From positions 4,836,001 to 4,900,000 of the forward strand of contig CM068771.1 in NCBI GenBank assembly GCA_035084275.1: a DNA stretch of 64,000 nucleotides, given 5' to 3'. Source of the DNA: Hydrolagus colliei. Its lineage: Eukaryota. A program made the translations under genes and the position numbers. The notes under the pieces were generated by a model. It searched no databases. It was not told where the DNA came from and saw only the letters and a program-made list of their open reading frames with translations. How positions within the stretch are numbered: position 1 is the first letter of the stretch; every line of letters begins with the position of its first letter. Positions 805 through 63,748 of the stretch are shown piece after piece.

Positions 805-912
805 CAACCTTTCCAAAAAAGAGAAGGAATATTCCTAAAGCAGAAATATAGACTATCACTGCAACTGCATTGTGTATTGTTACCTCGGTGTTTTGAGTAT
901 CGCAATCCAAAA
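805..912 (-). CDS. Gene 1 TM5 exon (108 nt): (I)LDCDTQNTEVTIHNAVAVIVYISALGIFLLFFGKV
   Basis: cccacag|TT...GTTG|gtaagt; open; same size and C..YxSxxG motif as paralog exons 37370-37477 and 58607-58714. Confidence 0.85.
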
Positions 913-962
913 CTGTGGGCAGAATTTAGATAGGTTGGATTACAATCCGAAGAAATATACTA

Positions 963-1376
963 CAGTAAAAGCTTGTTTGTCTGGCACCCAACCAATCAGA
1001 ACACTCAACCAACTGGTATCTCCCAATACAATTCATCATTCCAACAACTGAATCTCATACTGGAGCCATCTGGGACACTCACGAGTATGCTCACTTTGCG
1101 CATGCGTATAAAGCGTGCGCATGCGCACTTATTAAACTTAATGAATGCTGCAATTTTTATTTTACCAATCATTTTACTGAGTGCACTGGAATGCTTTATT
1201 GGTAAGTATCCATACAATATTCTGTTATTATTTAGTCTATTATTAATATGGTTTGTTTTAAAATAAGTAAAGTTTTTTTGTAGGATTTTCAGCAACTCGC
1301 CACTCAAATATCCGGCATATTTAATTAACCAGCACTGGTCAGGTCCCGAGGGTGCCGGATAAATGAGCTTTTACTG
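963..1376. mobile_element. Tc1/mariner Tigger-like MITE
   Basis: TA|CAGTAAAAGCTTGTTTGTCTGGCACCC ... GGGTGCCGGATAAATGAGCTTTTACTG. Confidence 0.8.
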
Positions 1377-1788
1377 TTTTCCCAACAGAAATTGTATATT
1401 TGTATCAACAGGCAGACACAACATGCTGCAATATGTATAATGTATTTTAATATAGTAAAATCGATTTTCAACACTTTGAGTAAGTATATCATAGCATATA
1501 CACAATGCATTGCTTTAGCGCTAAAATCTGTTTTTTAAAAATGTTTCAAGAGATGAGATAAAAGTGCCACTTTACGTTAGTTCCCACCAATGACAATTTG
1601 TTAGAAAATTCCCTGACAATCGCACAACTCGAGAGCATCGCTAGTGCACTTATCTCCACCGAACTTACAAGGTCAAATCTTTGTTCTCATCAAACCAAAC
1701 ACCGCACCTGCGCTCCCAACATGACACCAAAACACTTTGACTTTCAATCTGTTGTTTTGTTGTTTGTGACCTTCTATGGAATACTCAC

Positions 1789-1869
1789 TGCTTTGATGTA
1801 GTTTGTGAATGGGAACACCTGCGAGTATACAAGAACACACTCCATGCACAAGAAAAATATTACGCTGAT
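1789..1869 (-). CDS. Gene 1 TM4 exon (81 nt): (Y)QRNIFLVHGVCSCILAGVPIHKLHQS
   Basis: ttaacag|AT...AGCA|gtgagt; 81 nt as in both paralogs. Confidence 0.8.
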
Positions 1870-1920
1870 CTGTTAAGTAAAGTTTGAATAAATAATAATG
1901 ACATTTATGAAATTACGGTA

Positions 1921-2530
1921 CAGTAAAAGCCCATTTATCCTTGACCTGATCAACCATAACTTCCGTATAACTGGCACCTCAAAAAAAAGGTCCCCATTCG
2001 AATAACCGGATCTTATGGGCACAATCGCAGTGGTGCATTTAATGAGTCGATTGTCGCACGAGAGTACAGTACAATTAGTTGTGAATGCTGCCGGTAGTGG
2101 CACTTCCAGTTTTTCTTCTTAAGAGGGTCACTGTCGATTTTTTCCCTCCCTCTCTCCTTTTTCTCTCTCCCTCTTTTTCTTTCTCTCTCCCTCTCCTTCC
2201 TTCCTCTCTACCTCTCTCTTTCTATCTCTTTTTCCCCCCTCCCTCCCTCCTTCCCTCCCTCAGGGTGGAAAAAAATCCCCCGTCCGCCATTGTAGAAGTT
2301 TGCTTTCTGATTGTGTGCTGTGTTTATAGACTGTAATCGATATTTATCGCCTTATTGGTAAGTATCCATACAATATTGTTGTTATTTAGTCTATGATTAA
2401 TATGGTATGTTAAAAATAAGTTGATTTTTTTTGTGTTGGGTTTTCGGCAAATGGCTGCCCAAATATCCGGCATGCCATTGAACTGGCACTAGCCAGGTCC
2501 CAAGGGTGCCAGATAAACAGGTTTTTGCTG
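1921..2530. mobile_element. Tigger-like MITE, same family
   Basis: CAGTAAAAG.. TIRs, TA on both sides; 2355-2520 resembles 1198-1370. Confidence 0.8.
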
Positions 2531-2582
2531 TACATGCTATATATGTTTTTAAAAATCTACCTCTTAACGAAAATGAACTTAC

Positions 2583-2708
2583 AAACGTGTAACAAAATTG
2601 ATGTCATATTCATTTCAGTACTGAGGAAAATGGAGATTGAGTAGCACATCATTCCAGAAACGATGATACATCCAACCGCTGAGGACAGTTTGTATTCCAC
2701 TCCCATAT
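2583..2708 (-). CDS. Gene 1 TM3 exon (126 nt): (D)MGVEYKLSSAVGCIIVSGMMCYSISIFLSTEMNMTSILLHV
   Basis: ttcctag|AT...GTTT|gtaagt; open, hydrophobic, similar to 42395-42529 and 60376-60504. Confidence 0.8.
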
Positions 2709-3003
2709 CTAGGAAAGAACAGTATAAAGATTATGGTGAAATGGGATGTGTGTAAAATTACAACAGCGTGACAGTGTAATACAATACTTCTTTTTTGGGT
2801 GGAGGGGGGGGGGGTCATTTGGGTACCTAATACACGTGGAGTAAGGACACTTGCCCAACTTGCAGAGTACTAAGAGTGGCCAGTCGGGGAATATCTAAGT
2901 ACTCGTGTGTATGGAATGGAATATGAGGGAGTGAGGTGGAGGGATTGAGAGAGGGAGTTCCAGAGTTTTGGGGGGTAGTGGCTGAAAGCAAAACAACAAC
3001 AAC

Positions 3004-3490
3004 TTGCATTCATACAGTGCTCTCCACTGGCTCCCCATCCTCCAGAGGATCGAATTTAAGATCCTCGTCCTCACCTACAAGGCCTTACACGGCCTTGCCC
3101 CATCCTACCTAGCCGATCTACTCTCCCACGACACGCCCACCTGGACCCTCCGTTCAACAGGACTTGGCCTGCTCCAAGCCCCCCGCCCGAACCGCCCCAC
3201 CATCGGAGGCCGGGCCTTCAGTTTCTCCGCTCCCACCTTATGGAATGCCATCCCTCAATCCCTCCGTTTCGTCTCTTCCCTTTCCTCTTTCAAGGCCGAT
3301 TTGAAGACTTTCCTCTTCGATCGTGCCTTTTGTTCCACCCCGAACTCTTTTACCTCCCCTTCGTGTTTCACCCCTTCCCAAACACTCCCCTCCCAGCTCG
3401 GGTCACACGCCTCTTGTTTAGCGCCTTGGGACGTCCTCCCGACGTGAAAGGCGCTATATAAATGTAAATTGTTGTTGTTGTTGTTGTTGC
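3004..3490 (+). mobile_element. L2 LINE 3' fragment
   Basis: LHWLPILQRIEFKILVLTYKALHGLAP..GGRAFSFSAP; (TTG)n tail. Confidence 0.88.
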
Positions 3491-3889
3491 TCTTCACACA
3501 AGGCAGCCTCTCAGAACGCTTCACAGCGGTATTCAGTCGTGATCTAAAAGAGGGGAAGGAGGGGGCAAGGTGGAACCATTGGGGGAATGAGTTCCAAAGC
3601 AATTGGGAGGGACAGAGATCCAAACCCAAATAAATATTTCAGCCATACAAATTCAGTACACAGTATGTAATTAATCGAGTACGCATATTCCTACCTACCA
3701 GAAAATATTGATGCTCTATAAAGATGATTTACACTACTCATAATCTTATCAGTGATATCACTTATCAGTGATTTTCAACTCTGATAACTGCACATTAATC
3801 CTAAATTCAAGTTTGTCTTTTAAAAAAGAAATGTTTAGTCTTAGGATGTGGGCAATATAGTGTCCCTCAAACCGCGATGAAGTGGGTAA

Positions 3890-4582
3890 GTGCTCTCACC
3901 TCCTCCATCTTCCCGGTCTGCCCCTAAAACTCTCCAAACCTGTGCGCAACCTAGGCGTCAGGTTCAACCCCTTCCTCCCTCACATCCGGTTTCTCACCAT
4001 CATCGCCTTCTTCTACCTGTGACGGATCGCCCATCTCGGAAGCCCTGGTCACCTCTCGGCTGTCCTCGCTGGTCTCCCCTCCACCACAATCCACAGAGTC
4101 CAGCTGATTGAGAACTCTGCCGCCCGCATTCTCACCCACACCAAACTTCACTCCCCCGTTACCCCAGCCTTTGCCAGACTTTACTGGTTCCCTATCCCAG
4201 AGAGGATCAAATTCAAGATCCTCACCCTTGTCTTCAAATGTCTCCACTCCTCTGCACCCCGCTACCTCTCTGACTTCCTCTCTCCTCAAACCAGCACCTG
4301 TTGCCTTCACTCCACTGGGTCTGGCCTCCACCATGTCCCCCGAATCCTCTGCTTCACCCTCGGTGGCCGGGCCTTCAGCCTCTATGCCCCGAGGCTTTGG
4401 AATTCCCTTCCTCACTACCTTCGCCTCGCCCCCTCTTTTCTCAGCTTCCGGTCCCAGCTGAAGACCTTTTTCTTTGACTGTGTCTTTGGTCACCTTTCTA
4501 CCCCTGCCCCTGGCTCAGTACTGGGATCCGCTATTGTGAAGCGCTCTGACACGCCGTCTGGCGTGGAGGGTGCTATATAAAT
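3890..4582 (+). mobile_element. L2 LINE 3' fragment (decayed)
   Basis: Same C-terminal motifs with frameshifts; GCTATATAAA tail. Confidence 0.82.
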
Positions 4583-4907
4583 TGAACGAGGGAAGAAAGG
4601 GAGGGAAAGAGGTAGGTACCAGAGCGGGGTGGGTTGTGAGGTAGGGGTCGTGGTATGGGGGAGTAGAAAAATTGACTGTACATTTGTGGGTGAAACTCGA
4701 CAGCCAAACTGCGTACAACAGTGTCCCACAAACAGTTGTGGAAATGGGGTTAGGGGAGAAAGGGGGAAAAAAGGGTAAAGGGATGGGTTGGGGTAGGGGG
4801 AAGGAGAGCAAAAAAAATGACTGTCTATTTATGGGCGAAATATAGGATTAAACAGGAACATGATTTCTCATCTGCTAAATGTGATAGAAATGTGTGTGGT
4901 AACTTAC

Positions 4908-5009
4908 CTTCGTGTATCATGCAGAAAACAGATGAAATTAAGAGAGTGATGAAAGCAAGTATTTGGAGTCCCATAAAAACTCCAGTGAGCTGCATGTGGA
5001 TTTTGGAAT
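4908..5009 (-). CDS. Gene 1 TM2 exon (102 nt): (D)SKIHMQLTGVFMGLQILAFITLLISSVFCMIHE
   Basis: tttgtag|AT...GAAG|gtaagt; 102 nt in all three paralogs. Confidence 0.85.
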
Positions 5010-5384
5010 CTACAAATACAAAAATGACATAGTAATTAGCTTTGCCTCATTCATACTTTCCTCAAGTCCAATAACAATTTAAAACACATTATATTTGAAT
5101 GGCAACTTCAAATAGTAGTCTGAGGCACTTCCCAAAGTGCTAGAAGGTTTTAAACCGAGCTGGAGTTGGGATCAGGAAGGGTGGAGGGCAGGAGAGGTTG
5201 GGGTAGAGAGGTGGGGGGACTGAAGGTGCAGTCAACTAAGTTGGGTTTTAAGATTAGCCTTGAAGGAGACAGTGGGTGGGGGGATGGGTTGGTTTGCTAA
5301 ATGAAGGGACTGTGTGATGGAGTTTCAAAGTGTGGGAACAGAAAGCCTCAAGACCTGACAATTGATGGTAGTGACGGTCAGGTT

Positions 5385-5640
5385 TATAATAATCATACTT
5401 GCAATTGATTAGTGCTTTTCATGTCTTCTAGTCATCTCAAACCGCTTCACAGAATATACTGTAAATTGATTGTACATATGTGGGTGAAACGTGGCAGCCA
5501 ATTGTGAAGCAGTGTCCAACAAACAGTCACGGATTGAAATGACCAATTTTGTTTTGAGGTATTATTAGGCATGTGGAATAAGGAAACTTGTAAGGCCAAT
5601 TTGTCAGGTGAGTGCTCTAACCACTGAGCTACAAGGCTAC
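5385..5640 (-). mobile_element. SINE copy
   Basis: Same head, core and tail. Confidence 0.75.
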
Positions 5641-5876
5641 ACTCTCTATGGAGCTAGCGGATCATAGAAGTAGGGAGGAGCAAGGCCATTGGAGGGCTTT
5701 GAAGGTGAGGACAAGGATTTTGAACACTATCCACTGGGAGATGGAGAGTCAGTGAAGCCATATAGGATGAGTGATAAGGTCACAAAATCAATCCAGGCTT
5801 AACTATACTAACAGCTTGTTTACCAGATTGCCCAGCTCTTCCATACACAAACTATAATAACAACAAAATTACATTT

Positions 5877-6190
5877 ATCATAGAATCATAGAATCATAGA
5901 ATTTTACGGCACAAAAGGAGGCCATTCGGCCCATCTAGTCTGTGCCGGCTCTTTGAAAAGAGCGATTCAATCCCATTGCCCTGCCCGCTCCCCATAGCCT
6001 AATAGACCCGTTCTCCCTAAATAAAGATCTAATTCCCTTTTAAAAGTTGTTATCGAATCAGCCTCCATCACCTTTTCAGGCAATGCATTCCAGATTCGAA
6101 CAACTCGCTGAGTGAAAAAATTTCTCCTCAGCTCCCCTCTACTGCGCCTTGAAACTATTTTAAATCTGTGACCACGAGTCACAGATTCGA
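5877..6190 (-). mobile_element. CR1 3' fragment
   Basis: (CATAGAAT)n tail and ORF2 C-terminus RGHRFKI..GERAGQWD. Confidence 0.9.
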
Positions 6191-6983
6191 GCGCATTTTA
6201 TAGAGCGCATTTCACGTTGGGAGGACTACAGACTCTTCAGAAATCTTCAGCGCATTTACTCACCCATACCAATCTCCATGGGCCTATCACCCACCCCACC
6301 CTGGTTCCACACAGAAATATAAGAAGAGGAGGCAGGCCATTCATACCTGGGGATTGAACCTGACATCTTAGTTGCACATAGCTTTGGAGGGTTTTTAGGA
6401 CAAATTGGGTAGGTTGAGGAGGTCAGAACCATGGGATAGAAGATATTGATGGGAGCCAAAGGGTATGGCTTCCTTCTGATTGACATCTAATTTCAGGAAA
6501 TTTGTTCTCATCCAGCTCTTGATATTCGACAGATAGCTGACAGAACATCAGAGGACAGTTGGTCGCAATTGGAGGTGGAAAAGTAGATTGTGTGTCATCC
6601 TTATACATGTGACCCCATGACTGTAGATGACATCACTGAGACAGCATAGATGGATATACTGGATATATTGAATATATAGATATTTTGGCCATGGAGTAGG
6701 AAGAGCACAGATTCAGCAAATTATGAGGACTGGTCACATAAACTTGGTTCTTTTCCTATTTTCCTCCAATGTCTGGAACTTTATTCCAAAGTCTCTCCAA
6801 TTCCCTCCATCCCCATGTTCAGAGCTGCACTGAAAACTTACCTCACTGACCGCACTTTTGGTAATCTTTCCTTTCCCATCCTAGTCAGGTCCCACCTACC
6901 AAACTCGGGTGCCCAGCATGCAATGTGAAGTGTTTTCAGATGTCCTCCAGATGTGAAAGCAGTTATGTAAATGTAAATAAATG

Positions 6984-7280
6984 TGACTCATGACTAAAAT
7001 AGTTTCAAAACGAAGCAGAGGGGAGCTGAGAAGAATTTTTTTCACTCAGCAGGTTTTTCGAATCTGGAATGCATTGCCTGAAAAGGTGGTGGAGGCCGAT
7101 TGGAGGCCGATTGGATAACAGCTTTTAAAAGATAAATAGACCTTTATTTAGGGAGAACAAGTCTGTTAGGTTATGGGGAAAGAGTGGGGCAGTGAGATTG
7201 AGTTGCTCTTTTCAAAGAGCCGGCACATAGATGGGCTGAATGGCCTCCTTTTGTGCCGTAAAATTCTACGATTCTATGAT
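6984..7280 (+). mobile_element. CR1 3' fragment (older)
   Basis: Diverged copy of the same 3' end with ATTCTACGATTCTATGAT tail. Confidence 0.85.
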
Positions 7281-7331
7281 ATAAATCTATGCTGAATTTA
7301 AATATTTAAAATTGTCCATTAATTTGTAATA

Positions 7332-7581
7332 CAGGTATCCCCCGATTTATGACATTTCTATTTAAGCTGTTTCAATTTAACTCACATCATTTTTTAACAC
7401 CGTTTTATCGATATATGACATTTCGTTTCATTTTAACTACATAAAAATTTGGCGCCTCTTTTTTGCGCATGCGCAGTATATAATGTATAGATGGGTTTTG
7501 TAATGGGACCGCATGGGAAATCATGTTTTGATTTACATTACATTTTTCAGCAACACAACCTCATAAATCAAGGCATATCTG
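7332..7581. mobile_element. Tigger-like MITE
   Basis: TA|CAGGTATCCCCCGATTTATGA ... TCATAAATCAAGGCATATCTG|TA. Confidence 0.7.
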
Positions 7582-7620
7582 TAAATGTATTCCCACCAAA
7601 AATATGACATTTAATATTAC

Positions 7621-7737
7621 CATTATATTTCTTCATGCCAAGAAAGATTATGTGTATTGTCACACACAGAGTCATTACATTACTAACGAGCGCTATGATT
7701 GCTGCGGTTAGAAAATGTTGATAAAGCAGCACAACAC
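7621..7737 (-). CDS. Gene 1 TM1 exon (117 nt): (S)VVLLYQHFLTAAIIALVSNVMTLCVTIHIIFLGMKKYN
   Basis: atttcag|GT...AATG|gtaata; 117 nt in all three paralogs; lies within ORF 7568..7753. Confidence 0.87.
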
Positions 7738-11489: not shown

Positions 11490-11744
11490 TGTTGACAACA
11501 AGGAAGTGTGAATAGTTGCTCTGGCTGATGGAATTTTTAATGTTGCACGTGTACCACCCGCAGTCTGAGAGTCTTGCATCTTCAATTAAATATTTGCTAT
11601 TGTGTTTTTCTTCAGCTGTAAGTAGTTTCCCTTTGTGTGTCCACCAAACAGCATCAGGCATTCCACTTTTGACAACACAGCTCATCTCAACAACTTTAAC
11701 TACATAGATGGGATCTTGAACTATCAGTGGCCTTGATAATGTTT
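11490..11744 (-). CDS. Gene 1 Ig C2-type exon (255 nt)
   Basis: tcaatag|AA...AACA|gtaggt; encodes ETLSRPLIVQDP..MSCVV..WWT..SDCGWYTCNIKN..LVVN, with C-W-YxC Ig motifs. Confidence 0.92.
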
Positions 11745-15364: not shown

Positions 15365-15367
15365 ATT

Positions 15368-15385
15368 TGGCGTAGTCGGCAGGAT
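15368..15385 (+). promoter_or_regulatory. Primer-binding site complementary to tRNA-Ser
   Basis: TGGCGTAGTCGGCAGGAT is the reverse complement of the vertebrate tRNA-Ser(AGA/TGA) 3' end ATCCTGCCGACTACGCCA. Confidence 0.9.
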
Positions 15386-19270: not shown

Positions 19271-19615
19271 CTTCAACAAGTAAATATCTGAAGTAGACCT
19301 CAGAACTAGTTGATTGTCTGTGTGTTATTTCAAGCAGGTAATACCCAGTGTCCAGTTTTGTTAAGCGTTGCAGTGTGAGAGATCCATCGGTTGAATTTAT
19401 CTGTATTCTAGTTTGATAATACGCGTTAACTTCAATTTGAAGAGAAGTGTATTGATACCTGAGAATCATTGACTTCTTGACAGGGGTGAGATAGTACCAA
19501 TTGATTACATCCATATTTTTGAGTTGTTTATGTAGAACTCCAGGCAGTAAGATGAATGAATGTGTAGCAGCAAAAAAATTATTGGGATCCTTGGGCGTAG
19601 AAGTCATTGAAATAC
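19271..19615 (-). CDS. Gene 1 Ig V-type exon (345 nt), Cys-less CD2/CEACAM-N-like domain
   Basis: cttgcag|GT...GAAG|gtaagt; contains INWYY, RIQIN..DGSLTLQRL..DTGYY. Confidence 0.92.
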
Positions 19616-32818: not shown

Positions 32819-32832
32819 GTTGTGCTACTTGC

Positions 32833-32875
32833 CTTGAGGAGCCAGGAGGAGGAGGAGAGCGGCTGTGAGCAACAT
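32833..32875 (-). CDS. Gene 1 signal-peptide exon: MLLTAALLLLLAPQ, phase-1 GC donor
   Basis: ATG at 32875, hydrophobic core, ends CAAG|gcaagt (GC-AG donor consensus), in frame with the V exon. Confidence 0.8.
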
Positions 32876-34164: not shown

Positions 34165-34310
34165 NNNNNNNNNNNNNNNNNNNNNNNNNNNNNNNNNNNN
34201 NNNNNNNNNNNNNNNNNNNNNNNNNNNNNNNNNNNNNNNNNNNNNNNNNNNNNNNNNNNNNNNNNNNNNNNNNNNNNNNNNNNNNNNNNNNNNNNNNNNN
34301 NNNNNNNNNN
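34165..34310. other. Assembly gap (146 N)
   Basis: Run of N. Confidence 1.
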
Positions 34311-37369: not shown

Positions 37370-37477
37370 TGAGCCGTCCACAAAGCACACCTAATAGTCC
37401 AACAGCAGACAGATACACTAGCAGTGCAACAGTGCTTTTCAACACAATTTCTCGATCCAGAGGATTACAGATTACAA
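37370..37477 (-). CDS. Gene 2 TM5 exon (108 nt): (V)VICNPLDREIVLKSTVALLVYLSAVGLLGVLCGRL
   Basis: tctacag|TT...CTCA|gtaagt; size and motifs conserved. Confidence 0.85.
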
Positions 37478-39112: not shown

Positions 39113-39193
39113 CAACTTTGCTTGAAGCGTAAATCAGGACACTTGAACCAATGGTAGCAAACAATTGATAAACAAGCAAAATTTTCCAATGAA
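39113..39193 (-). CDS. Gene 2 TM4 exon (81 nt): (V)HWKILLVYQLFATIGSSVLIYASSKV
   Basis: ttgacag|TT...GTTG|gtgagt. Confidence 0.8.
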
Positions 39194-41149
39194 CTGTCAA
39201 ATGAATAAAAAATTTAATCAATAAATAGCAGCTAACTTGTGAAAGAATAATAATAAGCATGTATATTTTGGGTGCTCGGAATATTATTCCAACAAGTTGT
39301 CATTGAAACCTCTGATAAATAATATAATCTAACAGTGTGAAGCACTATGAATCATCCCAATGTCATGATAACATGCCGTATCAACTACAAGCATTATTAT
39401 TATAGCACTTATATTTGATCTTTTACATTTTTCTTGTTAAATATTCACTGACTTTTGCATGCAAATAATTTAATAAAAATGCAATACTTTCTTCTGAGGT
39501 GCACCCACCCACCCTCCCTCCCTCACACGCACACGCACACAAACACACCACACAGGCAGGTGACCAGGCTGGGTCAGATATCAGGCCCCTTATCTCCCCC
39601 AAAGCCAAAGCTCGGGTGTGTGAGCTGGTAACCTTTACACATCACTTTTTGTTTTCCTTTTTGGCCGAATTGTAAATTGTCCAAATCAGTACGAATAGTT
39701 TAGTAAAATTTAAGCTCAATTCTTCATATTTTATTGCTGACTGTAATGCATAATAATAACGTTGTTTGCATTTATTAATGCATATTATGACATCATTGAG
39801 ATGTCTCAATGCAATATACTGTAGTGACTGGGGATATTGTCATTGACAATTAATAATAATAATAATAATCCTTGCATTTGATATAGCGCTTTTCACATCT
39901 TATCAATATCTCAAAGCGCTTCACAGAATATACTGTAAAGTGAATTGACTGTATATTTGGTGGGCGAAATGCAGCAGCCAATTGCACACCAATATGCAAT
40001 ATAAAAATGCAATACTTTCTTCTGAGATAATCTTTACAAATCTCTTTTTGGCCGAATTGTAATCTATGTATATGCCATACGCCAATTAGCAGCCAATTGC
40101 ACACCGCAGTGTCCCACAGACAATTATGGATTGAGTTACCAAGTTATTATTGGAGGTTTTATTATTGGATCTGCCAATTGACTAATAACTGGATTTGTAC
40201 TTGCTATTTGGCAAACAGAGATGAACAGTAAGGAGTCTTTGCTATGTCTGGAAACTGAACTCAATTGATTGCAATATGCACATCACCTTCAATATGTCTA
40301 TTTACTTAATTAGTCAATGTTAATGTTTATTTGCAGCCTCCAATATAAATGCCATCTGAACATTACTATTTGATATAGCTATGACAGGCCCGTCTAACTT
40401 GCTTGAGGTGGGAAATATGTAAATGTGCTTGGCTTTTTGCCTAAAACTACACTTCCCTTTGCAGGATTTTGGTTTGTGAAATCTTGGCTTCAACTGGCTT
40501 GCAACCTTCTCCTCAGATGTAAGAAAGTTTGAGGATAAGGTTTCTTACATCTTATCCTCAGATGTAAGAAAGTTGTTGGCTTTTTAAAAAATGTATCATA
40601 TTAATGATAAATATAGCATAATGCACTGCCAAGTAGTCGTGTAGAGGCAGAGTACATTATGGGCTTGAAGAGGGAAGAAAAAAGGTATAGGAAAATTAGA
40701 GGCATAAAGAAATATCAGAATAATGCTGAATAGTGGGATTGAATGAACAGCTTGCTCTGAGACCTGGCATTTATTCAATGAGCCAAATTACCTTGTTCTG
40801 TGCTTTAAATTTCTAATCCTACATTCACTCATAGCACAAGAAATAAGTCATTCCAACTTGGACAGTTGACGCTCATCATAGGATCAGCACCCTGCCCAAG
40901 TTTTGGGGTTGCCCCACTAATGGGAGAAATGTTAGTCGGATGTATGTCTGGAAGAGCAGCCTCACTAACATGCAGTGTAATAAGTTTATTTTATTATTTG
41001 TAGTTTAACAACTGCCTATGGTCTTTTTTTCCCTTTGCCCTCTAACCCACTTCAACAGGAACAATACACATTTGATAATAATAATAATCCTTGCATTTGA
41101 TATAACGCTTTTCAAATCTTATCGACATCTCAAAGAGCTTTGCAGAATA

Positions 41150-42037
41150 TAGGTAGACCCCGCCTAACGAATGCCTGGTTAACGAAAGTTCACTACAATG
41201 AGGGTTTCTATTTGTACCACTTATTCGCCTTACGAAGGCTGTGTTCGCTATAACAAATGTTTACACACAGTTTAAATTTCACAGACTTCTCGTGGACAGC
41301 TTTTCATGGGTAGCGTCGTTCCTGGTTGCCCCTGCAACACACGCTCAGACTTCAGCATGCCTCAGTTAAGCAGTGCAATGCAGCCCCTCCCATATGGGAG
41401 GATCTTAAGTGGCAGAATGCTTCGTGGCTTTAATAATAGTAAGTTGAGGACTGTCTGTATTTTATTGTTGTATTTTCTAACATTTTCATATTTTATTGTT
41501 GTATTTAAAGTTGTGTAGCCTTCAATAGCAGTTATATCTACCTTAGGCCTTCGCTAGTATAGGTTGAGCTATATCCTGAATCCGGCAACCTCGGGACCGA
41601 GGCCGAGCTGGTTTTCCTGTTTTTCCGGACTTCGGAATGTGTTTCTGATGTCCGAGGTCCAGAAACGCCTGAGCCCAGGTTCAGGTATTTCCGGACTTCA
41701 GAATACCAGAAGCACATCACTAGTACAGAAATGCCTGGGCCCAGGTTGCGAAATTTCGGTGTGGTGATTGTGAAGACCTGGCCTGGAACAGGTCGGATTG
41801 GCGTTTTTATTCTTGCAATTTTTATCCGATTCTGGATTCCAGAACTCCGGATTTTGGCCGCTTAACCTGTACACTGAAAATTTTAGCGCTTGGAACCACT
41901 AGGAACTAAACTGATTTTTAGCAAGGAGGCTCAGGTCGGGGTGGCGTTTTAGCTGCGGCCAAATACAATAATAGTTAAACTGTATTTTCGCACAATGAAG
42001 GGTTTTTAAGTCCCAAACACCTACGTTAAGCTACCTG
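41150..42037. mobile_element. Tigger-like MITE inserted in a SINE at TA
   Basis: (C/T)AGGTAG termini; the SINE sequence CAGAA-TA-TACTGTAAAG is restored on removal. Confidence 0.7.
41560..41869. mobile_element. Nested Tigger-like MITE
   Basis: TA|TAGGTTGAGC ... GCTTAACCTG|TA. Confidence 0.7.
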
Positions 42038-42394
42038 TATACTGTAAAGTGTATATTTGTGGGTGTAACGTGGCAGCTAATTGCACACATCAATGTCCCC
42101 CACAAACAGTTGTGGATTGAAAATGACCAATTTTTGTTAAAAAAAATGGAGGGATTATTAATTATTAATCAGTTTAGATTATTAAGGTTTCGCACTGATC
42201 AGCCTGGATTCGAACAGACGTCTCACACTTGTAAGGTAAGTGCTCTAGCCACTGAGTTTACAGCGACTCCACACTCATACATTGTATAGGGAGGGACATG
42301 AGGGGCAGCCAGACAGACACACAGAGAGGACAGATCTGGAAGTTTCGAATGTGGAGATGGAGAAATAGCAAAACAGGTTTGTAAATGAACTCAC

Positions 42395-42529
42395 CATTGT
42401 GCAACACTATTAAACTTTCTGATTTCCTAGAAACAACTAGAGTAAAAACAAGAAAACCAGTGTAAATCAGCATGGTCATGACTAGAAGTCCCAGGATTCC
42501 CATAAAGATTTGGTACGCTAATTCTATTT
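42395..42529 (-). CDS. Gene 2 TM3 exon (135 nt): (E)IELAYQIFMGILGLLVMTMLIYTGFLVFTLVVSRKSESLIVLHN
   Basis: tttccag|AA...AATG|gtgagt; LAY.IF and YTGF shared with gene 3. Confidence 0.85.
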
Positions 42530-43221
42530 CTGGAAAAGATCAAAATGAAGAATTAGTATTAATAATAATGTAATGAAATGTCAAGTGAGTAGATACTATA
42601 GCAACAACAACTTGCATTATTTAGTGCCCCTCACCAATACTGAGACAGAGGGAGGTGACCATAAGTACAATCAAAGAGGAACATCTTCAGGTATGAACTG
42701 AAGATGCGGAAGGAAGGGGGCAAGGGATTGAGGGAAATGAATTCAGAGTTTTGGGGTGCAGTGACTGAAAGCATAGCCACTGATGGTGGAATGGAGGAAT
42801 GGAGGATACAAGCAACATGCAGGAGTCTGGAGCCAGTTGAGTGGAGACAGCAGTTAATGGGTTGGCAGATAAGCAAGTTGGCGAGTTGTGGATTGAGTGA
42901 CCAATTTTTTAGTTAAGCGATTATTACCCTTGGAAAGCAATCTGCCAATCAACTAACAACTGGGTTCTTTCTTGCTGCTAGTTAAACAGAGGCATGTGGA
43001 GAATGGAAACTTGCCTAACCAATCAAGTATAAAAATCTGAAGTCACCCAGCTGCCTGCTACTCTCCCAGTGAAATCACTATTTAATTCTCCTGTTACTTG
43101 CCCAAGGTTCTGCCTTGCCCAAGAATCGAACCCAGACCCTATCATTTGCAAGGCAAGCGCTCTAACCATAACTCAGTGGTAAATTTAATGCAAATCAAAA
43201 TTTCAATGAAACGTAACATAC

Positions 43222-43323
43222 CTGCTTCAAAGAGGCTAAAAAGACATGCAACAAACAGACATTTCACGGAGATTAGATGAAGAAGTATAAACAATGCAGT
43301 GAGCCTCCGATGATATTTCTTAA
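43222..43323 (-). CDS. Gene 2 TM2 exon (102 nt): (V)KKYHRRLTALFILLHLISVKCLFVACLFSLFEA
   Basis: tttatag|TT...GCAG|gtatgt. Confidence 0.85.
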
Positions 43324-43487
43324 CTATAAACAACAAATAAAATACAAATAACATTTCAATTATTTAATTGAAATACCAGCAAATTACAAAATGTCTAAAT
43401 TTTGAAATTTGAAATAAAACACAAATGGGAAAATGTACGTGGTTTATAAAATTCATCCTAATATTAACATTAATAATAATCTTTGTA

Positions 43488-43698
43488 CAGTAAAAGACCA
43501 TTTATCCAGCACCCTCGGGACCTGGCCAATGTCGTTAAATCAAGTGCCAGATATTCGGCTGAAAATGCAAAACATTAAATTAATTTATGCATTTTTCCAG
43601 AGAAATTCTGGCTAATCGAATGCGGACCTTTTTTTTTTGCAATGCCGGTTATATGGAACTTACGGTTGATCGGATGCTGGATAAACAGGCTTTTATTG
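43488..43698. mobile_element. Tigger-like MITE
   Basis: TA|CAGTAAAAGACCATTTATCCAGCACC ... GATGCTGGATAAACAGGCTTTTATTG|TA. Confidence 0.78.
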
Positions 43699-43947
43699 TA
43701 TTTGAAATAGCACTGTACAAGCAGCCAGCCGGAGTCAGCCAAGCAGAGGCAACGGGAAGTGGGTTGGGGAGTAAGCAGGTGGGAGAGGCCGGAGAGGTAG
43801 TGAGGTGCCAGGGCATGAAGGGATTTGATGATGACTGTGATGATCTTGAAAGAGAGCCATTGGAGCCTGGTGGACTTGTATGATAGGGTGTGCAGTTTAG
43901 TGTGGATGAGATTACGGGCAGCAGAGTTCATAATATGCACTTATTAC

Positions 43948-44064
43948 CTTTGTATTTATTTAAACCATAGAGCATTATGAATAGTCCAGAAGCAAAGGTG
44001 GTTACACTGCTAACTAGTGATGTTAAGGATGCAGAAAGTATGTGTTGATGTCCACGAACAATAC
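43948..44064 (-). CDS. Gene 2 TM1 exon (117 nt): (S)IVRGHQHILSASLTSLVSSVTTFASGLFIMLYGLNKYK
   Basis: gcttcag|GT...AAAG|gtaata. Confidence 0.87.
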
Positions 44065-44224: not shown

Positions 44225-44370
44225 AACATTGCACGTGTACCAGCCGCAGTGTGAGACTGTTGGATCAGTGAAGATCAATGGGTTTCCATAATCTGTCTTG
44301 TTTAGAATTATATCTTCTTTTGCCCCCAAAATGCGATGGTGTTTTTTTTCTCTTTATCTATTGCACATGA
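44225..44370 (-). pseudogene. Decayed duplicate of the Ig C2 exon inside gene 2
   Basis: Reads KEDIILNKTDYGNPLIFTDPTVSHCGWYTCNVNVV*; frameshifted near the WW motif, truncated after CNV, no intact splice ends. Confidence 0.75.
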
Positions 44371-44680: not shown

Positions 44681-44784
44681 TCTTAGTTATTATAATAATC
44701 ATTGCATTTAACATAGGGCTTTTCACTTCGTCTAGAGGTCTCAAAGCATTTCACAGAATATACTGTAAATAATATACGTACTCA

Positions 44785-46989: not shown

Positions 46990-47241
46990 TGTTCACGGTG
47001 AGGAAGTATGAACGGTTTCTCTGGCTGACCTCATTTTTCACATTGCACGTATACCAGCCACAGTGTGAGATCTTTGGATTATTGAAGAACAATGTGTTTT
47101 CAGAATCTGTGCTGTTTAAAATTGTTTCTCCTCTTGTCCACCAAATTTGAATGTTTTTTTTCTCCTTGATAACACAGTTCAGTTTAACAGCATTAGTCAC
47201 GTAGATGGGATTTTGAATGATCAGTGGTGATGACAAAAATT
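46990..47241 (-). CDS. Gene 2 Ig C2-type exon (252 nt)
   Basis: cccatag|AA...AACA|gtaggt; LNCVI..IWWT..SHCGWYTCNVKN. Confidence 0.92.
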
Positions 47242-49509: not shown

Positions 49510-49881
49510 TTTCAATTTCCAAGTTTATGGTGTTTACAGCATAAAGCTGAAATCTTTCTGAGGTATTGCTTACTTTTTGTACCTGTCCTTCATAAATGCC
49601 ACTATCAGTTATTTCTAAATGCTGGAGTTCTATAGAGCCGGTCCTTTTATCAAACTTCAGTCGACGTTTATAAAATACATTGATGAGAATTCTGGTTTCA
49701 GGTGATGAATATCGCAGGATAACCGTATTCTTCTCAGGAATTATATAGAACCAATCAATCTTTTCATTCCCTTCAAGATGTTTGTTATGAAATATTCTCA
49801 TTGTAACAGAAGAATCCAAACCAACAAACATAGTTTCATGGTTCATCAGGACATGAGTATCTGTCACTACAGCACGACCCT
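49510..49881 (-). CDS. Gene 2 Ig V-type exon (372 nt), Cys-less
   Basis: ctttcag|AG...GAAA|gtaagt; IDWFY, RLKFD..TGSIELQHL..DSGIY. Confidence 0.92.
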
Positions 49882-54888: not shown

Positions 54889-54902
54889 GTTGTGCTACTT
54901 GC

Positions 54903-54945
54903 CTTGAGGAGCCAGGAGGAGGAGGAGAGCGGCTGTGAGCAACAT
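54903..54945 (-). CDS. Gene 2 signal-peptide exon, identical to that of gene 1
   Basis: Same 43 nt as 32833-32875, with GC donor. Confidence 0.8.
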
Positions 54946-58606: not shown

Positions 58607-58714
58607 TTTGCTTGGCAAAAAAGAGAATCATTAGTCCCATGACAGACATATAGGCTTCCATTATAAAAACATTTTTTGTTTCCACCACAGTACCTGGAAC
58701 TTTGCATTTTTCAA
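58607..58714 (-). CDS. Gene 3 TM5 exon (108 nt): (V)EKCKVPGTVVETKNVFIMEAYMSVMGLMILFFAKQ
   Basis: ttcacag|TT...CAAA|gtaagt. Confidence 0.85.
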
Positions 58715-59101: not shown

Positions 59102-59182
59102 CGATTTGGTATGCTCTGTATATTAGGTTACATGAAACAACTACAGAAAAGGCTCCATTTGCAAGAAAAATGCTCGAAGGAT
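59102..59182 (-). CDS. Gene 3 TM4 exon (81 nt): (Y)PSSIFLANGAFSVVVSCNLIYRAYQI
   Basis: ctctcag|AT...ATCG|gtgagt; IFL..G shared with gene 1. Confidence 0.8.
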
Positions 59183-60375
59183 CTGAGAGGAAATTATATT
59201 AGATTATTTAGGTGATAGAAAATAGAACATCATAGAATACTACAACACAGAAGAAGGCGATTCCACCCATCTTGTCTATGTTGGCTTTTTGAAACATCTA
59301 CCCAACTAGTCTCACTCCCCTGCTCTCATCATATAGCCTGCAAATCTTTCATTTTCAAGCGTACATCCAATTTGCTTTCATCGCGCTTTCAAGCCCTGCA
59401 TGCCACGTGGAACTATATGAAACAAAATTGTTTGTGTTGCAAATAACGCATTCACCTTTCTATTGTCATTTCTTGACCTATTTTGATTTCTCCTTGACTA
59501 TTTTTCATTTATTAGCTGGATTTCAATTATATAATTAAACACTGAATGTACAGTGCCTTAGGATGTCCTACTGACATGAAAGATGCTGTACAAATATAAT
59601 TATGTTGTTGTTTTAGATGCAATAACATCTCAACCAACCAACCAAACCCACGCACCCACCCACCCAACCAAACTTACATTCCTTTAGCGCCTTTCACCTC
59701 GAGAGGACCTCCCAAGGCACTGTACACTTAGGTAGGGACAAGAGCAGCAGTGGACAGGTTGGGGCGGGATACAGAACAGTAGAACAATTGCCCTCATATT
59801 TGTGGGCGAAACGCGGCAGCCAAACGCGGCAGTCACGAAAGTGGGATTAGGGGAAAAACGGAGAAAGATGGCAAGGGGAAGATTTCGAGTACGGGGAAGG
59901 AGAGCAGGAAAGCCGACTGTATATTTGTGGGCGAATAACGTCTTTCTGAGATGGTATGTGCAGAGTATACAATAAAGTACGATTTGTTAAATTAGAAGTC
60001 TTCAAAATCATTTAATAGTTTATCAAAATGTAGGAAGTCACTTATTTCTTGTTGTTTGGTCAAGCCATCCAATGACCAAATGCAATTTAAGTGACCAATG
60101 TAATTTAATTATCAACTCAAAATCAGCAAATAGGTTTGCATAACCCTTCGATGTCCTGACTTGGATGCGGGAGAAATGGAATTTCAAATACTACTCCTAT
60201 GTCATCTCTTTGAAAGAACTAACTGGTCCCCACTCTTAACCCACAACATACAATTTGTTTTCAAGGATATATCCAGTTCCCTTTTGAAAGTTATCTTTGA
60301 ATTTGCTTCCATCAACCTTTCAGACAGTGATTTCCAGATCACACCAAACCTCTGCATAAAAAACACTTCACTTAC

Positions 60376-60504
60376 ATTGGCTTAACAAAAATGAAGATGT
60401 TAGTCTGATTTGAGGACGCAGGAAAAGAAAGCCAGTATAGCTCATCATTCCGAAATTCAATCCACATACTAATCCTGAGAAAATTCTGTATGCGAGGCCA
60501 ATAT
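60376..60504 (-). CDS. Gene 3 TM3 exon (129 nt): (D)IGLAYRIFSGLVCGLNFGMMSYTGFLFLRPQIRLTSSFLLSQ
   Basis: tttctag|AT...CAAT|gtaagt. Confidence 0.85.
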
Positions 60505-61374
60505 CTAGAAATGACAAGATAAGGAATGTGGTCAAATAGAGAGAGTAAAACTGTGATCTGATTCATAGAATGTTACAGCACAATCAGCTTAAAGTGCCCC
60601 TGCAACCATGGGAGGGTGGGATTAATGGGGACAGGGACTGGGGATGGGATAAGAAAATGACAAACAGTTGATAATGTTCATTGACAAAAATACACGTCTT
60701 CGCGCAGATTCTGAATGTGACGATAAAGGGAGAGAAACAAGGGATGGAGGTTCTGAAAGCATGGACAGAATGTCTGAAACTTTACCCACTGAACGTGAAG
60801 CAGACAGGGTGAGGTGGAAAAGGCAAGGAACATGAAACAGACCACAGTCGGGTACTCAGGATCCCAACATCACAGAAGGGCCGGGCAATCTGTAACAAAC
60901 TAGGAACTTGGCACATCAATGATGCCAAGTTCTGTCCACTGTTTCTAGTGGACAGAAGTTAAAATGTCCTCCCAATCCCTCCCTTGTTTCTTCCCCGTTC
61001 CTCCACACCCCCATCCTAACTTGATATCCTAACTCCAATTGCATGTGAACAGCTGGAATCCAATCTCAATTAATCACAATGTCACTCCTCCCATTTTCAT
61101 TCGGGAGCCATTCGAAACACAGAAGGCGTGACTGTGTGCACTCAGCGGTGACCAGCACAGCATTTTGTCTGGATCACCTAGACAAGGATGTTGTTCAATT
61201 TATCCGGCCTGTTTAGAATAGGTGAGAATATACATGAATACGTGTTGGGGATTCAGTCCAATTTACCTGGCACCTGAAGTGATAATATTCATTGCATTTG
61301 CACATATCCTTTAGATGACTCAAAGCGATTCCCAGAATATATTGTTTGTCCCGATGTGTGTGCCCACCCAAACC

Positions 61375-61682
61375 AGAACCTGCTGCCTTTGCTCCATCGG
61401 GTCTGGCATCCTCCATGTCCCCCGAATCCTCCACTCCACCCTCAGCAGCCGTGCCTTCAGCCACTATGCCCCAAGGCTCTGGAACTCTCGTCCTCATTCC
61501 CTTCACCTCGCCCCCTCTCTTCCGAGTTTCAGGTCAAAGTTAAAGACCTTTCTATTCGTCCGCACCTTTGGTCACCTTTCTATCCCTGCCCCTGGCTCAG
61601 TCACGGGATCTTCTAGTGTGAAGCGCTCTGAGATGCTGTCCAGCGTGGAGGGCGCTATATAAATCAATGTTGTTGTTGTTGT
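61375..61682 (+). mobile_element. L2 LINE 3' fragment
   Basis: SRAFSHYAPRLWNS..FRSKLKTFLF; (TTG)n tail. Confidence 0.85.
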
Positions 61683-61849
61683 AGCACATTATCACTTCCT
61701 CCAGATGTCTCAAAGCGATTCCCAGAATACATTGTTTGGTCCGATGAGTGTGCACAGCCACCTCAAGTCATCAGCCTGAAATATTGACATTTCCTCTCCA
61801 CATGACCGGCAATCAGTGGATTGCTCCCAGCCACTTTATTTTGTTGCGT

Positions 61850-62147
61850 TTCGTAGTTAAGTGGCTGGAGCACTCGCCTCACAAGCAAGACACCTTCGTT
61901 CAATTCCAGACACAGCGAAATCTTCAGCAACTTTCATACTCCACACACGTGATAAGAATCCTCAAAACGAAATGATAATAAACTGATCATTTTAAACCCT
62001 GACTGTTTGTGGGACACTCCTGTGCATGTTTCACATGCAAATCTAGTCAATTCACTTTACAGCATATTCTGTGAAATGCCATGATACATCTGGAAGACGT
62101 GAAAAGTGCCATATCAAATGCAAGGATTATTATTATTATCATTATTA
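61850..62147 (+). mobile_element. SINE copy (followed by an inverted copy ~62150-62370)
   Basis: tRNA-like head at 61850 and (TAT)n tail at ~62125-62147. Confidence 0.7.
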
Positions 62148-62823
62148 TCAATGAATTGACTCGATGTTTTGTGAGCAAAACTGCAGCCAATTGTGCACAA
62201 CAATGTCCCACAAACAAGTCATGGGGTAAAGTGACTGATTTATTTACTATCAGCAACTGGTTTCCATCTTACTGCCTGGGGCCTGTGGGGTAAGGAAACT
62301 CACACTGCATTTTGCCAGGACTCTTGTTTGCAAGGCGAATGCTCAGTGGCCAGCTAAAGCAGCTACAACTTGATTAGCATCAGCCACTGAAGCACGGGGA
62401 AAGGTTCTCCTCTCCTGTTTTTCCCACAATGATCAATTCTGCTGCTCAAATGTTAAATTTGAATGTTTTTTGTGGTCAGTTTACAGGCAATCACCTTACC
62501 AGTGTTAGGGTCCCTTGAGGACCCAAGCGTGTGATAGTGAACACAATAACGTGAATTGACTGTATAATTTGTTGGCAGAACACAGCAGTTAATTGTGCAC
62601 AGTCGTGGATTGAGTTACCAATCATTGTTATTTTCAAAGGATTATAATGGAGAACAAGTAGAAAACAATTCATTCATTTGCTTCATAATAATTTCTGCAT
62701 GAATTGGTGTTGAACAATAAATTCTGTGAAGCAATTTGAGACGTTTGACCACATCAAAATTGAGAGTGTATTTTTTAGTTATGGAGGTAGGTAGAAATTT
62801 AAACCATCCAAGAGAGTGCTTAC

Positions 62824-62925
62824 CTTCAGCTAATATGGACAGCATGGATGCAATTAACAGACAGACCAAGGACAATACTTGAAGGAGGATAAAAACTGCA
62901 GTGAGATTCTCATGGTATTTGTAAG
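62824..62925 (-). CDS. Gene 3 TM2 exon (102 nt): (A)YKYHENLTAVFILLQVLSLVCLLIASMLSILAE
   Basis: ttcacag|CT...GAAG|gtaagc. Confidence 0.87.
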
Positions 62926-63101
62926 CTGTGAATATAAACAAAAATTTGACAAGATTAACAGCTTTGTATCTGTATCTGCAACAAGATATATTCCAAACAA
63001 CAAGTGTGTTAGTCACTTCATTTCAAATCAATAATTAAAATTTAAAATCAGATTTTAATAGTCTTTGAATTGATGAAAGAAAGCAAGAAAACGTTTACTA
63101 C

Positions 63102-63218
63102 CTTTGTATATTTTTAAGGCATGCAACATCATGAAGACAACTACGCATAAATTTATTACATTACTAATCAGTGCGAAGATAGATGCTGACAGGATGTGAC
63201 GATAAATAAACACAGCCC
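63102..63218 (-). CDS. Gene 3 TM1 exon (117 nt): (G)AVFIYRHILSASIFALISNVINLCVVVFMMLHALKIYK
   Basis: gtttcag|GG...AAAG|gtagta. Confidence 0.87.
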
Positions 63219-63496
63219 CTGAAACAGTAAGTTTACATGAATTTAGATCATTTAAAAAAAATTCTAAGAATTTATCTACGTTAAATTATTATTATGATGA
63301 CAGTTGCATAAACTGCATAAACTGTAAATTTTTTAGCATTCTTCACATGCATCCTTCAAGACATGTTTGAAAGCCCTCCTCCACCACCAAGCCTTTAGCA
63401 CATTTCTACGCTCCACCCTACGACCAACAGGGTTCAAATCCCTGATTATATAATTTTGCATTCCAATATAAAAATCATAAGATTGTAAAAACATAC

Positions 63497-63748
63497 CATT
63501 GACATTGAGGAAATGTGATCGGTTGCTCTGGCTGACCTCATTTTTCACAATACATGTGTACCAGCCACAGTCTTCTATATTGGCTTTTGCAATGACCAAT
63601 GTGCTTTGAAACAATCTACTGCTAACAACTTCATCTTCCTTTGTCCACCAGATTTCAGTGGCCTTTCCCCCTTGCTCTTGGCAACACAATTCAACCATTT
63701 CAGTTACGTAGAGGGGATTTTGAAATATCAGTGGCATTGACAAGCTTC
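63497..63748 (-). CDS. Gene 3 Ig C2-type exon (252 nt)
   Basis: tggacag|GA...AATG|gtatgt; ELCCQ..IWWT..EDCGWYTCIVKN. Confidence 0.9.

What the first reader, a model, noticed from the sequence alone, without database searches (positions are those of the whole stretch)
805..63748. Conserved spare cysteine pair suggests a CD47-style Ig-to-membrane-loop disulfide
Seen: all three C2 exons have an extra Cys before the F strand (SDCGWYTC, SHCGWYTC, EDCGWYTC), and so does the decayed copy. All three TM5 exons have Cys at exactly the third full codon (LDC, VIC, EKC), in the predicted extracellular TM4-TM5 loop, although neighbouring residues are not conserved. Established: CD47 has a long-range disulfide (Cys33-Cys263) from the Ig domain to the loop before TM5, and the E-F loop of an Ig domain faces the C-terminal, membrane end. 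Inference: the two cysteines pair and clamp C2 onto the helix bundle.
Basis: partly seen in the sequence, partly recalled or inferred. Interest (0 to 1): 0.75.

Follow-up and report, generated by a model that had tools for sequence, protein, structure and literature searches.

The report
Cysteine clamp in shark Ig-5TM receptors
Three neighbouring genes of a cartilaginous fish encode surface proteins with two antibody-like domains on a five-helix membrane base, and a spare cysteine pair kept across sharks, rays and chimaeras probably ties the lower domain to that base, as a similar bond does in human CD47.

Summary
Three minus-strand paralogs (leader, V, C2, five single-helix exons, all phase 1) each carry a spare Cys in the C2 motif D/H-C-G-W-Y-T-C. 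Each also has a Cys at the third full codon of the TM5 exon.

The assembly gap (34165-34310) lies 3,060 bp from gene B's TM5 exon and 1,290 bp from gene C's leader, so it touches no exon used here.

The genes belong to an unnamed family that I found only in cartilaginous fishes. Among 21 genes, 19 keep both cysteines. One (Mustelus) has lost both. One (Carcharodon) lost the C2 Cys, kept the loop Cys and gained a new Cys at the base of strand D. Cys at that C2 position is about 0.1% in other Ig domains.

An AlphaFold2 model puts the C2 Cys beside the C2-TM1 junction and the loop Cys at the tip of the TM4-TM5 hairpin. The tool gave no coordinates, so the S-S distance is unmeasured.

No sequence or fold evidence ties the membrane domain to CD47, so this is a CD47-like mechanism, not shown membership.

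The scan noted the same idea earlier for sister genes 187 kb away (s1-138672).

The pairing is probable (about 0.65) but unproven.

The parts
63497..63748 (-). Gene A, C2 exon (phase 1). Spare Cys codon 63567-63569 in EDCGWYTC. The V and leader exons lie beyond the window end.
58607..58714 (-). Gene A, TM5 exon. Loop Cys codon 58704-58706 (E-K-C). The exon ends at a GTAAGT donor.
59102..63218 (-). Gene A, TM1-TM4 exons: 63218-63102, 62925-62824, 60504-60376, 59182-59102.
54903..54945 (-). Gene B leader exon (MLLTAALLLLLAPQ) with a GC-AG donor. Its sequence is identical to gene C's leader.
49510..49881 (-). Gene B V exon. It matches V-set and has no Cys.
46990..47241 (-). Gene B C2 exon. Spare Cys codon 47060-47062 in SHCGWYTC.
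44225..44368 (-). Decayed C2 fragment in gene B's C2-TM1 intron. It has stops, lacks strands A and G, and keeps SHCGWYTC (Cys codon 44246-44248).
39113..44064 (-). Gene B TM1-TM4 exons: 44064-43948, 43323-43222, 42529-42395, 39193-39113.
37370..37477 (-). Gene B TM5 exon. Loop Cys codon 37467-37469 (V-I-C).
32833..32875 (-). Gene C leader exon.
19271..19615 (-). Gene C V exon. It matches V-set, with a weak 2B4-like match, and has no Cys.
11490..11744 (-). Gene C C2 exon. Spare Cys codon 11560-11562 in SDCGWYTC.
1789..7737 (-). Gene C TM1-TM4 exons: 7737-7621, 5009-4908, 2708-2583, 1869-1789.
805..912 (-). Gene C TM5 exon. Loop Cys codon 902-904 (L-D-C).
34165..34310 (.). Assembly gap in the stretch between gene B's last located exon and gene C's leader. 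It is not part of any exon used here, and it was neither filled nor bridged.

Best explanation
Genes A, B and C encode type-I-oriented surface proteins. Each has a signal peptide, a CD2/CEACAM-like V domain without cysteines, a C2 domain and five membrane helices. The spare Cys sits in the E-F turn of C2, one residue before strand F, next to the point where strand G runs into TM1. The loop Cys is the first residue after TM4, at the tip of a TM4-TM5 helical hairpin that projects above the membrane. The two most likely form an intramolecular disulfide that fixes the membrane-proximal Ig domain onto the helix bundle. This would set the orientation of the ectodomain and couple it mechanically to the membrane domain, as the C15-C245 (C33-C263) bond does in CD47. 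Shown: the residues, their conservation, the loss and relocation pattern, and the secondary-structure positions. Inferred: the topology (by parity and the signal peptide), the spatial proximity, and the bond itself.
For: 1) Genes B and C have exactly four ectodomain or outer-loop Cys: the canonical B/F pair plus these two. 2) 19 of 21 family genes from chimaera, sharks and rays keep both Cys. The two subfamilies are split with 100/100 support and inner branches of 0.76 and 1.54 changes per site, and the neighbouring loop residues vary. 3) Mustelus P0175 has G at the C2 site and F at the loop site, so it has lost both. 4) Carcharodon P0179 is 92% identical to Cetorhinus P0178. Only 5 residues differ in C2, and these include C204G and R184C. 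The new Cys directly precedes strand D, at the same membrane-facing end as the E-F turn. 5) No gene keeps the C2 Cys while lacking the loop Cys. 6) Cys at this motif position is seen in 2 of 1,879 motifs in other Ig proteins. 7) The AF2 model (pLDDT 77, pTM 0.60) has strands F 69-76 and G 81-88, with TM1 starting at 91. That places Cys68 opposite the C2-TM1 linker. The loop Cys238 lies between helices 207-237 and 242-273. 8) The precedent is established: the CD47 Ig-to-ECL2 disulfide is required for function and is kept even in viral CD47-like proteins (PMC8410850; PMC10902115).
Against: No SG-SG distance could be measured, because the structure tool returns no coordinates. On its face, P0179 is a single loss of one partner. 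The joint loss is a single event; under independence it would fall in one of the two genes that lack the C2 Cys with probability about 2/21. Several subfamily-2 proteins carry further, unconserved ectodomain Cys and so have odd counts. Gene A has an extra adjacent Cys in strand B. The positive-inside rule is only moderately clear and is ambiguous for gene A (my count on the sequences). The alignment places the loop Cys of the two subfamilies one column apart. All family sequences outside the window are gene predictions. I could not fetch DNA for P0175 or P0179.
Confidence: 0.65

Rival explanations
1. The two cysteines do pair, but between two protomers: C2 of one chain bonds to the TM4-TM5 loop of another, giving a covalent dimer rather than an internal clamp.
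For: The co-conservation, joint loss and relocation pattern would look the same under this reading. Nothing I ran separates cis pairing from trans pairing.
Against: The C2 Cys sits two to three residues from the chain's own TM1 start, so its own bundle is the nearest partner. The CD47 precedent is intramolecular (PMC8410850).
Confidence: 0.1
2. The two cysteines are conserved for separate reasons. For example, the C2 Cys could bond to a partner protein or to a second copy, and the loop Cys could do the same or stay as a free or modified thiol.
For: P0179 keeps the loop Cys without the E-F Cys. Some members carry additional unpaired-looking Cys.
Against: This reading requires two independently maintained odd cysteines in every lineage. 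It does not explain why the only gene lacking the loop Cys also lacks the C2 Cys. It also does not explain why P0179 gained a Cys on the same face.
Confidence: 0.15
3. The topology is not as assumed. One weakly hydrophobic segment, TM4 in genes A and C, does not span the membrane. The 'loop' Cys is then cytoplasmic or inside the membrane (for example palmitoylated) and cannot reach C2.
For: TM4 has the lowest hydropathy, 1.59 in genes A and C. The charge bias is weak in gene A.
Against: AF2 builds five long helices in both models, with TM4 at pLDDT about 72-86. The residues after TM5 are basic in most members. This reading does not explain the link with the C2 Cys.
Confidence: 0.07

Closest known systems
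CD47 (integrin-associated protein) and its C15-C245 / C33-C263 inter-domain disulfide
   Same: An Ig domain is joined by a very short linker to five membrane helices. A Cys in the loop between helices IV and V is proposed to bond to a Cys on the membrane-facing side of the Ig domain. The gene layout is also alike: Ig exon(s), five exons for the membrane domain, and separate tail exons (PMC10902115). Whole-model Foldseek lists full-length CD47 (7MYZ_C) at rank 3 over 275 columns. The language-model feature search puts CD47/OPG166 clusters first for two very different members, at low scores of 0.68 and 0.66.
   Different: This family has two Ig domains (V plus C2, sometimes V-V-C2), not one IgV. 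Its V domain lacks the canonical disulfide. The Ig-side Cys is in the E-F turn of a C2 domain, not the CD47 Cys15 position of an IgV domain. There is no Pfam CD47 or V-set_CD47 match. A membrane-domain profile finds nothing in PDB sequences. The membrane-only model does not retrieve CD47 in PDB or Swiss-Prot models. The whole-model TM-score to 7MYZ is only 0.23.
Poxvirus CD47-like proteins (OPG166 cluster)
   Same: They share the Ig-plus-5TM architecture. According to PMC8410850, the inter-domain Cys pair is among the few residues kept in them. They are the top feature hit.
   Different: The feature scores are far below the tool's own reliability mark of 0.9. No alignment or E-value supports kinship.
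CEACAM1 / CD2-SLAM / HEPACAM-type two-domain Ig ectodomains
   Same: The V domain lacks the canonical disulfide and is followed by a C2 domain. The best structural matches of the C2 domain are the CEACAM1 membrane-proximal domains (Z 13, 29% identity). Database names for family members are CEACAM1-like, HEPACAM-like and CD48-like.
   Different: Those families are single-pass or GPI-anchored. In the Ig proteins I sampled, Cys at the x position of the DxGxYxC motif is almost absent (2 of 1,879).

Membership tests
CD47 family | Membrane domain matches Pfam PF04549 (CD47 transmembrane region) | tested here: not met
   No PF04549 hit at E <= 10 in 7 full-length family members. It is also absent from the precomputed Pfam lists.
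CD47 family | Single N-terminal IgV of the V-set_CD47 type (PF08204) with the canonical disulfide | tested here: not met
   The window V exons hit only generic V-set, with a weak 2B4 match for gene C, and contain no Cys. A C2 domain follows the V domain.
CD47 family | Five membrane helices directly after the Ig domain, N-terminus outside | tested here: met
   There are five hydrophobic segments, one per exon. AF2 builds five helices at 91-126, 132-162, 168-193, 200-237 and 242-273, and again in the membrane-only model. Orientation is inferred from the signal peptide and the Ig domains.
CD47 family | Helix-bundle fold superimposable on CD47 (7MYZ) | tested here: inconclusive
   The whole model hits 7MYZ_C at E 1.2e-5 over 275 columns, but with TM-score 0.23. 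The membrane-only model gives no CD47 among the top 50 PDB, the 30 listed Swiss-Prot or the top 50 VIA-wide matches, only generic bundles. The models are of medium confidence and helical folds discriminate poorly.
CD47 family | Disulfide between the Ig domain and the loop between helices IV and V | not testable with these tools
   Only indirect evidence exists: conservation, joint loss, relocation and position. No coordinates were available.
CD47 family | Gene layout: Ig exon, five constant exons for the membrane domain, separate tail exons | tested here: met
   In the window there is one phase-1 exon per helix, and the TM5 exon ends at a donor. For CD47, exons 8-13 encode the tails and earlier constant exons encode the ectodomain and membrane domain (PMC10902115). 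The tail exons were not located here.
CEACAM / CD2-type Ig adhesion receptors | V domain without canonical disulfide plus C2 domain(s) | tested here: met
   The C2 model best matches CEACAM1 domains.
CEACAM / CD2-type Ig adhesion receptors | Single-pass or GPI membrane anchor | tested here: not met
   There are five membrane helices.
Unnamed chondrichthyan V-C2-5TM family | Full-length alignment and tree placement with shark and ray members | tested here: met
   Window genes A, B and C fall inside subfamily 1 (100/100 support), with Heptranchias, Narcine, Carcharodon, Pristiophorus, Chiloscyllium and Scyliorhinus proteins.

The most novel reading that the evidence does not exclude
The family is a true, very old sister of CD47. 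The five-helix module with its Ig-to-loop disulfide would predate the split, and it was once carried by CD2/CEACAM-type two-domain ectodomains. CD47 would then be the lone survivor in mammals of a wider class of Ig 'pentaspan' receptors. That class may still exist in reptiles too, because the top AlphaFold-cluster matches to the membrane domain are 'HEPACAM-like' proteins whose organisms were hidden.
Probability: 0.2. Interest if true: 0.75.

Novelty: new variant of a known kind. Interest (0 to 1): 0.55.

Why it matters
The 2021 structure paper calls CD47 the only five-transmembrane receptor of the immune system (PMC8410850). This window shows a multigene family with the same overall plan: Ig domains on five helices, and a likely covalent Ig-to-loop clamp. 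It has a different ectodomain and no detectable sequence kinship. If the bond is real, the clamp is a recurring solution for coupling an Ig head to a helix bundle. The family would then give independent material for asking what that coupling is for, and for tracing where CD47's membrane module came from. My literature searches found no paper describing the family.

Tried and rejected
1) SG-SG distance. Two AF2 jobs ran, but the tool returns only confidence and secondary structure, and no model file appears in /data. The distance was therefore not measured.
2) CD47 kinship by sequence. Pfam and the C2+TM and TM-only profiles against PDB sequences gave only Ig hits or nothing.
3) CD47 kinship by fold. 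I ran Foldseek PDB, VIA second look, Swiss-Prot models, AlphaFold clusters and VIA-wide. The membrane domain looks like a generic up-down bundle, with cytochrome b561 and designed four-helix bundles on top.
4) The profile-profile test against CD47 was not run. No tool gave me a CD47 sequence and I did not type one from memory.
6) DNA of the Mustelus and Carcharodon genes, to check the codons. The files were too large and no DNA was returned.
7) Tail exons after TM5. A motif scan and a tblastn with homolog tails found nothing convincing.
8) The window's own spliced proteins could not be submitted to the folding or search tools, because a spliced product has no reference. The Heptranchias homolog P0132 was modelled instead.
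9) I rejected the idea that the decayed C2 copy adds evidence. It keeps the Cys by descent only.
Full report
WHAT IS IN THE WINDOW. The window is vertebrate DNA (43% G+C) rich in interspersed repeats. On the minus strand lie three tandem paralogs of one gene. Every intron is phase 1.

Gene A is cut by the window end. It has a C2 exon at 63748-63497 and five short exons: 63218-63102, 62925-62824, 60504-60376, 59182-59102 and 58714-58607.

Gene B has a leader at 54945-54903, a V exon at 49881-49510 and a C2 exon at 47241-46990. Its TM1-TM5 exons are 44064-43948, 43323-43222, 42529-42395, 39193-39113 and 37477-37370.

Gene C has a leader at 32875-32833, a V exon at 19615-19271 and a C2 exon at 11744-11490. 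Its TM1-TM5 exons are 7737-7621, 5009-4908, 2708-2583, 1869-1789 and 912-805.

Each short exon holds one hydrophobic segment. The TM5 exon ends at a GTAAGT donor, so tail exons must follow. I could not find them. Pfam calls the V exons V-set (gene C also weakly 2B4-like) and the C2 exons Ig_2/Ig_3/I-set.

THE GAP. The run of N at 34165-34310 lies between gene B's TM5 exon (3,060 bp away) and gene C's leader exon (1,290 bp away). No exon that carries either cysteine, and no exon of my models, touches it. I did not fill or bridge it. The only open point is that gene B's unlocated tail exons could lie near it.

THE OBSERVATION. The motifs EDCGWYTC (A), SHCGWYTC (B) and SDCGWYTC (C) are present exactly as described. 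So is SHCGWYTC in a decayed C2 fragment at about 44368-44225, which has stops and lacks both ends. All three TM5 exons start with two bases of a split codon, then E-K-C, V-I-C and L-D-C. The seven Cys codons were re-read individually. The flanking residues differ between copies. The decayed copy adds nothing, because it keeps the Cys only by descent.

THE FAMILY. A profile of the three C2 exons, searched against 1.84 billion representative proteins, returned mostly giant multi-Ig proteins. It also returned four single-hit proteins of 250-460 residues with the same layout. One of them, P0031, is a Callorhinchus milii entry with the identical leader peptide, so the window is most likely from that chimaera or a close relative.

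Three word-indexed searches then gave about 25 distinct proteins. All are from cartilaginous fishes: Heptranchias, Pristiophorus, Narcine, Pristis, Chiloscyllium, Scyliorhinus, Carcharodon, Cetorhinus, Heterodontus and Mustelus. They are named 'uncharacterized' or are given borrowed names such as CEACAM1-like, HEPACAM-like, CD48-like and A33-like.

A tree of 21 genes splits them into two subfamilies with 100/100 support. The inner branches are 0.76 and 1.54 changes per site. The window's three genes sit in subfamily 1.

TEST OF CO-CONSERVATION.
- The C2 spare Cys is present in 19 of the 21 genes, and the loop Cys in 20.
- In subfamily 1 the loop Cys follows TM4 directly. In subfamily 2 it sits in K-G-C-E-P, one alignment column away.
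- The best-kept aligned columns of the membrane domain reach 17-18 of 21.
- Outside the family, Cys at this motif position was seen in 2 of 1,879 Ig motifs.

There are two natural exceptions. Mustelus P0175 reads S-D-G-G-D-Y-T-C and K-G-F-E-P, so both cysteines are gone while the canonical Ig pair and the helices remain.

Carcharodon P0179 reads S-D-G-G-I-Y-I-C but keeps K-G-C-E-P. Its near-identical relative, Cetorhinus P0178 (92% identity), has both cysteines. Within the C2 domain the two proteins differ at only five positions, and two of these are C204G and R184C. The new Cys directly precedes strand D. By strand register (D 49-52 pairs with E 57-60 in the model), this is the same membrane-facing end as the E-F turn. 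In Ig domains generally, the residue at the base of strand D contacts the Asp of the D-x-G motif (established knowledge of antibody V domains; not measured here).

I read P0179 as a possible relocation of the partner. Taken at face value it is a single loss, and I count it as evidence against strict co-conservation.

No gene keeps the C2 Cys without the loop Cys. The numbers are small: one joint loss, with a chance of about 2/21 under independence. The pattern is therefore suggestive, not proof.

GEOMETRY. An AlphaFold2 model of the C2-plus-membrane part of Heptranchias P0132 was built on a 16-sequence alignment (pLDDT 77, pTM 0.60). It gives strands at 8-12, 20-25, 33-38, 49-52, 57-60, 69-76 and 81-88, and helices at 91-126, 132-162, 168-193, 200-237 and 242-273.

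The spare Cys is residue 68, the residue before strand F. Because F (69-76) and G (81-88) form a hairpin, residue 68 lies opposite residue 89, which is the two-residue linker to TM1. The loop Cys is residue 238, the first residue after TM4 in a four-residue turn. About ten polar residues of TM4 and of TM5 flank it, so the hairpin should rise above the bilayer.

With a signal peptide and Ig domains outside and five spanning helices, the TM4-TM5 loop is extracellular. The TM1-TM2 loop is strongly basic in gene B and moderately so in gene C, which fits. The charge bias in gene A is ambiguous (my count on the sequences). Both cysteines are thus expected at the Ig-membrane interface.

COMPARISON WITH CD47. 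The C15-C245 (C33-C263) bond links the IgV domain to the loop between helices IV and V. It is needed for normal ligand binding and signalling, and it is kept even in viral CD47-like proteins (PMC8410850; PMC10902115).

Similarities:
- Ig domain(s) on a very short linker, followed by five helices.
- A Cys in the equivalent loop.
- A gene with one exon per helix and separate tail exons.
- 7MYZ_C at rank 3 for the whole model, over 275 columns.
- CD47/OPG166 clusters as first hit by language-model features for the membrane parts of two members that share only about 15% identity. The scores of 0.68 and 0.66 are far below the tool's own mark for trust. The other hits are Ig proteins, which suggests that the whole-protein context leaks into the features.

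Differences:
- No Pfam CD47 or V-set_CD47 match.
- Nothing in PDB sequences for a membrane-domain profile.
- TM-score 0.23 to 7MYZ.
- A membrane-only model (pLDDT 79, pTM 0.69) that retrieves only generic bundles and never CD47.
- The ectodomain is CD2/CEACAM-like (V without disulfide, plus C2). The C2 domain matches the CEACAM1 membrane-proximal domain best (Z 13).
- The Ig-side Cys is in a different domain type and at a different position.

I therefore file this as 'works like CD47's clamp'. Membership in the CD47 family is untested at the decisive level and is not supported by the tests that ran.

VERDICT. Rivals are a trans (dimer) version of the same bond, independent roles for the two cysteines, and a different topology.

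The same idea was already noted by this scan for three sister genes about 187 kb beyond this window (s1-138672, s1-138638). That is not independent evidence, and my tests here were run on this window and on public proteins. I found no paper describing the family.

Noticed in passing
window 54870-55330 and 32800-33330: The leader exon, its GC-AG donor (CAAG|GCAAGT) and about 470 bp upstream are almost base-for-base identical between genes B and C, although their other exons are only about 30-45% identical at the protein level. This points to recent gene conversion or duplication of the 5' end.
   Followed up: partly
window 21810-32824 and 54380-54888: An 11-kb minisatellite (18/30-bp unit, over 600 copies of the 18-bp unit) fills intron 1 of gene C directly after the leader exon. 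A 0.5-kb version sits at the same place in gene B.
   Followed up: no
window 44225-45969: Gene B's C2-TM1 intron holds a decayed second C2 exon just 150 bp upstream of TM1. It also holds a 336-codon reverse-transcriptase-like open frame (44962-45969). The intact C2 exon lies 2.9 kb further up, so gene B may have arisen by a partial duplication or fusion.
   Followed up: partly
window 63680-63690 (gene A C2 exon): Gene A has two adjacent cysteines in strand B (E-L-C-C-Q). This gives its C2 domain an extra Cys that genes B and C lack.
   Followed up: no
window 14942-15600 and 18650-19324: Two near-identical segments give identical open frames and 50-bp tandem repeats. They lie in gene C's V-C2 intron, consistent with the long terminal repeats of the retroviral element noted earlier (s1-139137).
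   Followed up: no
AlphaFold cluster hits A0A3Q0GE46 (451 aa, residues 249-431) and A0A4D9ECI9 (576 aa, residues 313-510): The best structural matches to the membrane-only model are 'HEPACAM-like' proteins with a multi-helix C-terminal part. Their organisms were hidden. If they are tetrapod proteins, as the accession style suggests to me, the Ig-5TM family is not confined to cartilaginous fishes.
   Followed up: no
proteins P0158, P0167, P0165, P0168 (subfamily 2): Some subfamily-2 members carry a further Cys in the first part of C2 (N-S-T-C-V), or a Cys in the TM2-TM3 outer loop (E-V-C-P/H-E-M, inside a 30-residue insert), or both. The two do not co-occur consistently.
   Followed up: partly
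proteins P0154, P0151, P0141, P0157, P0031: Many database entries of the family are truncated or skip a helix exon (no TM5, no TM1, or intron read-through). Annotation of these short exons is therefore unreliable, and isoforms lacking the clamp loop may exist.
   Followed up: no
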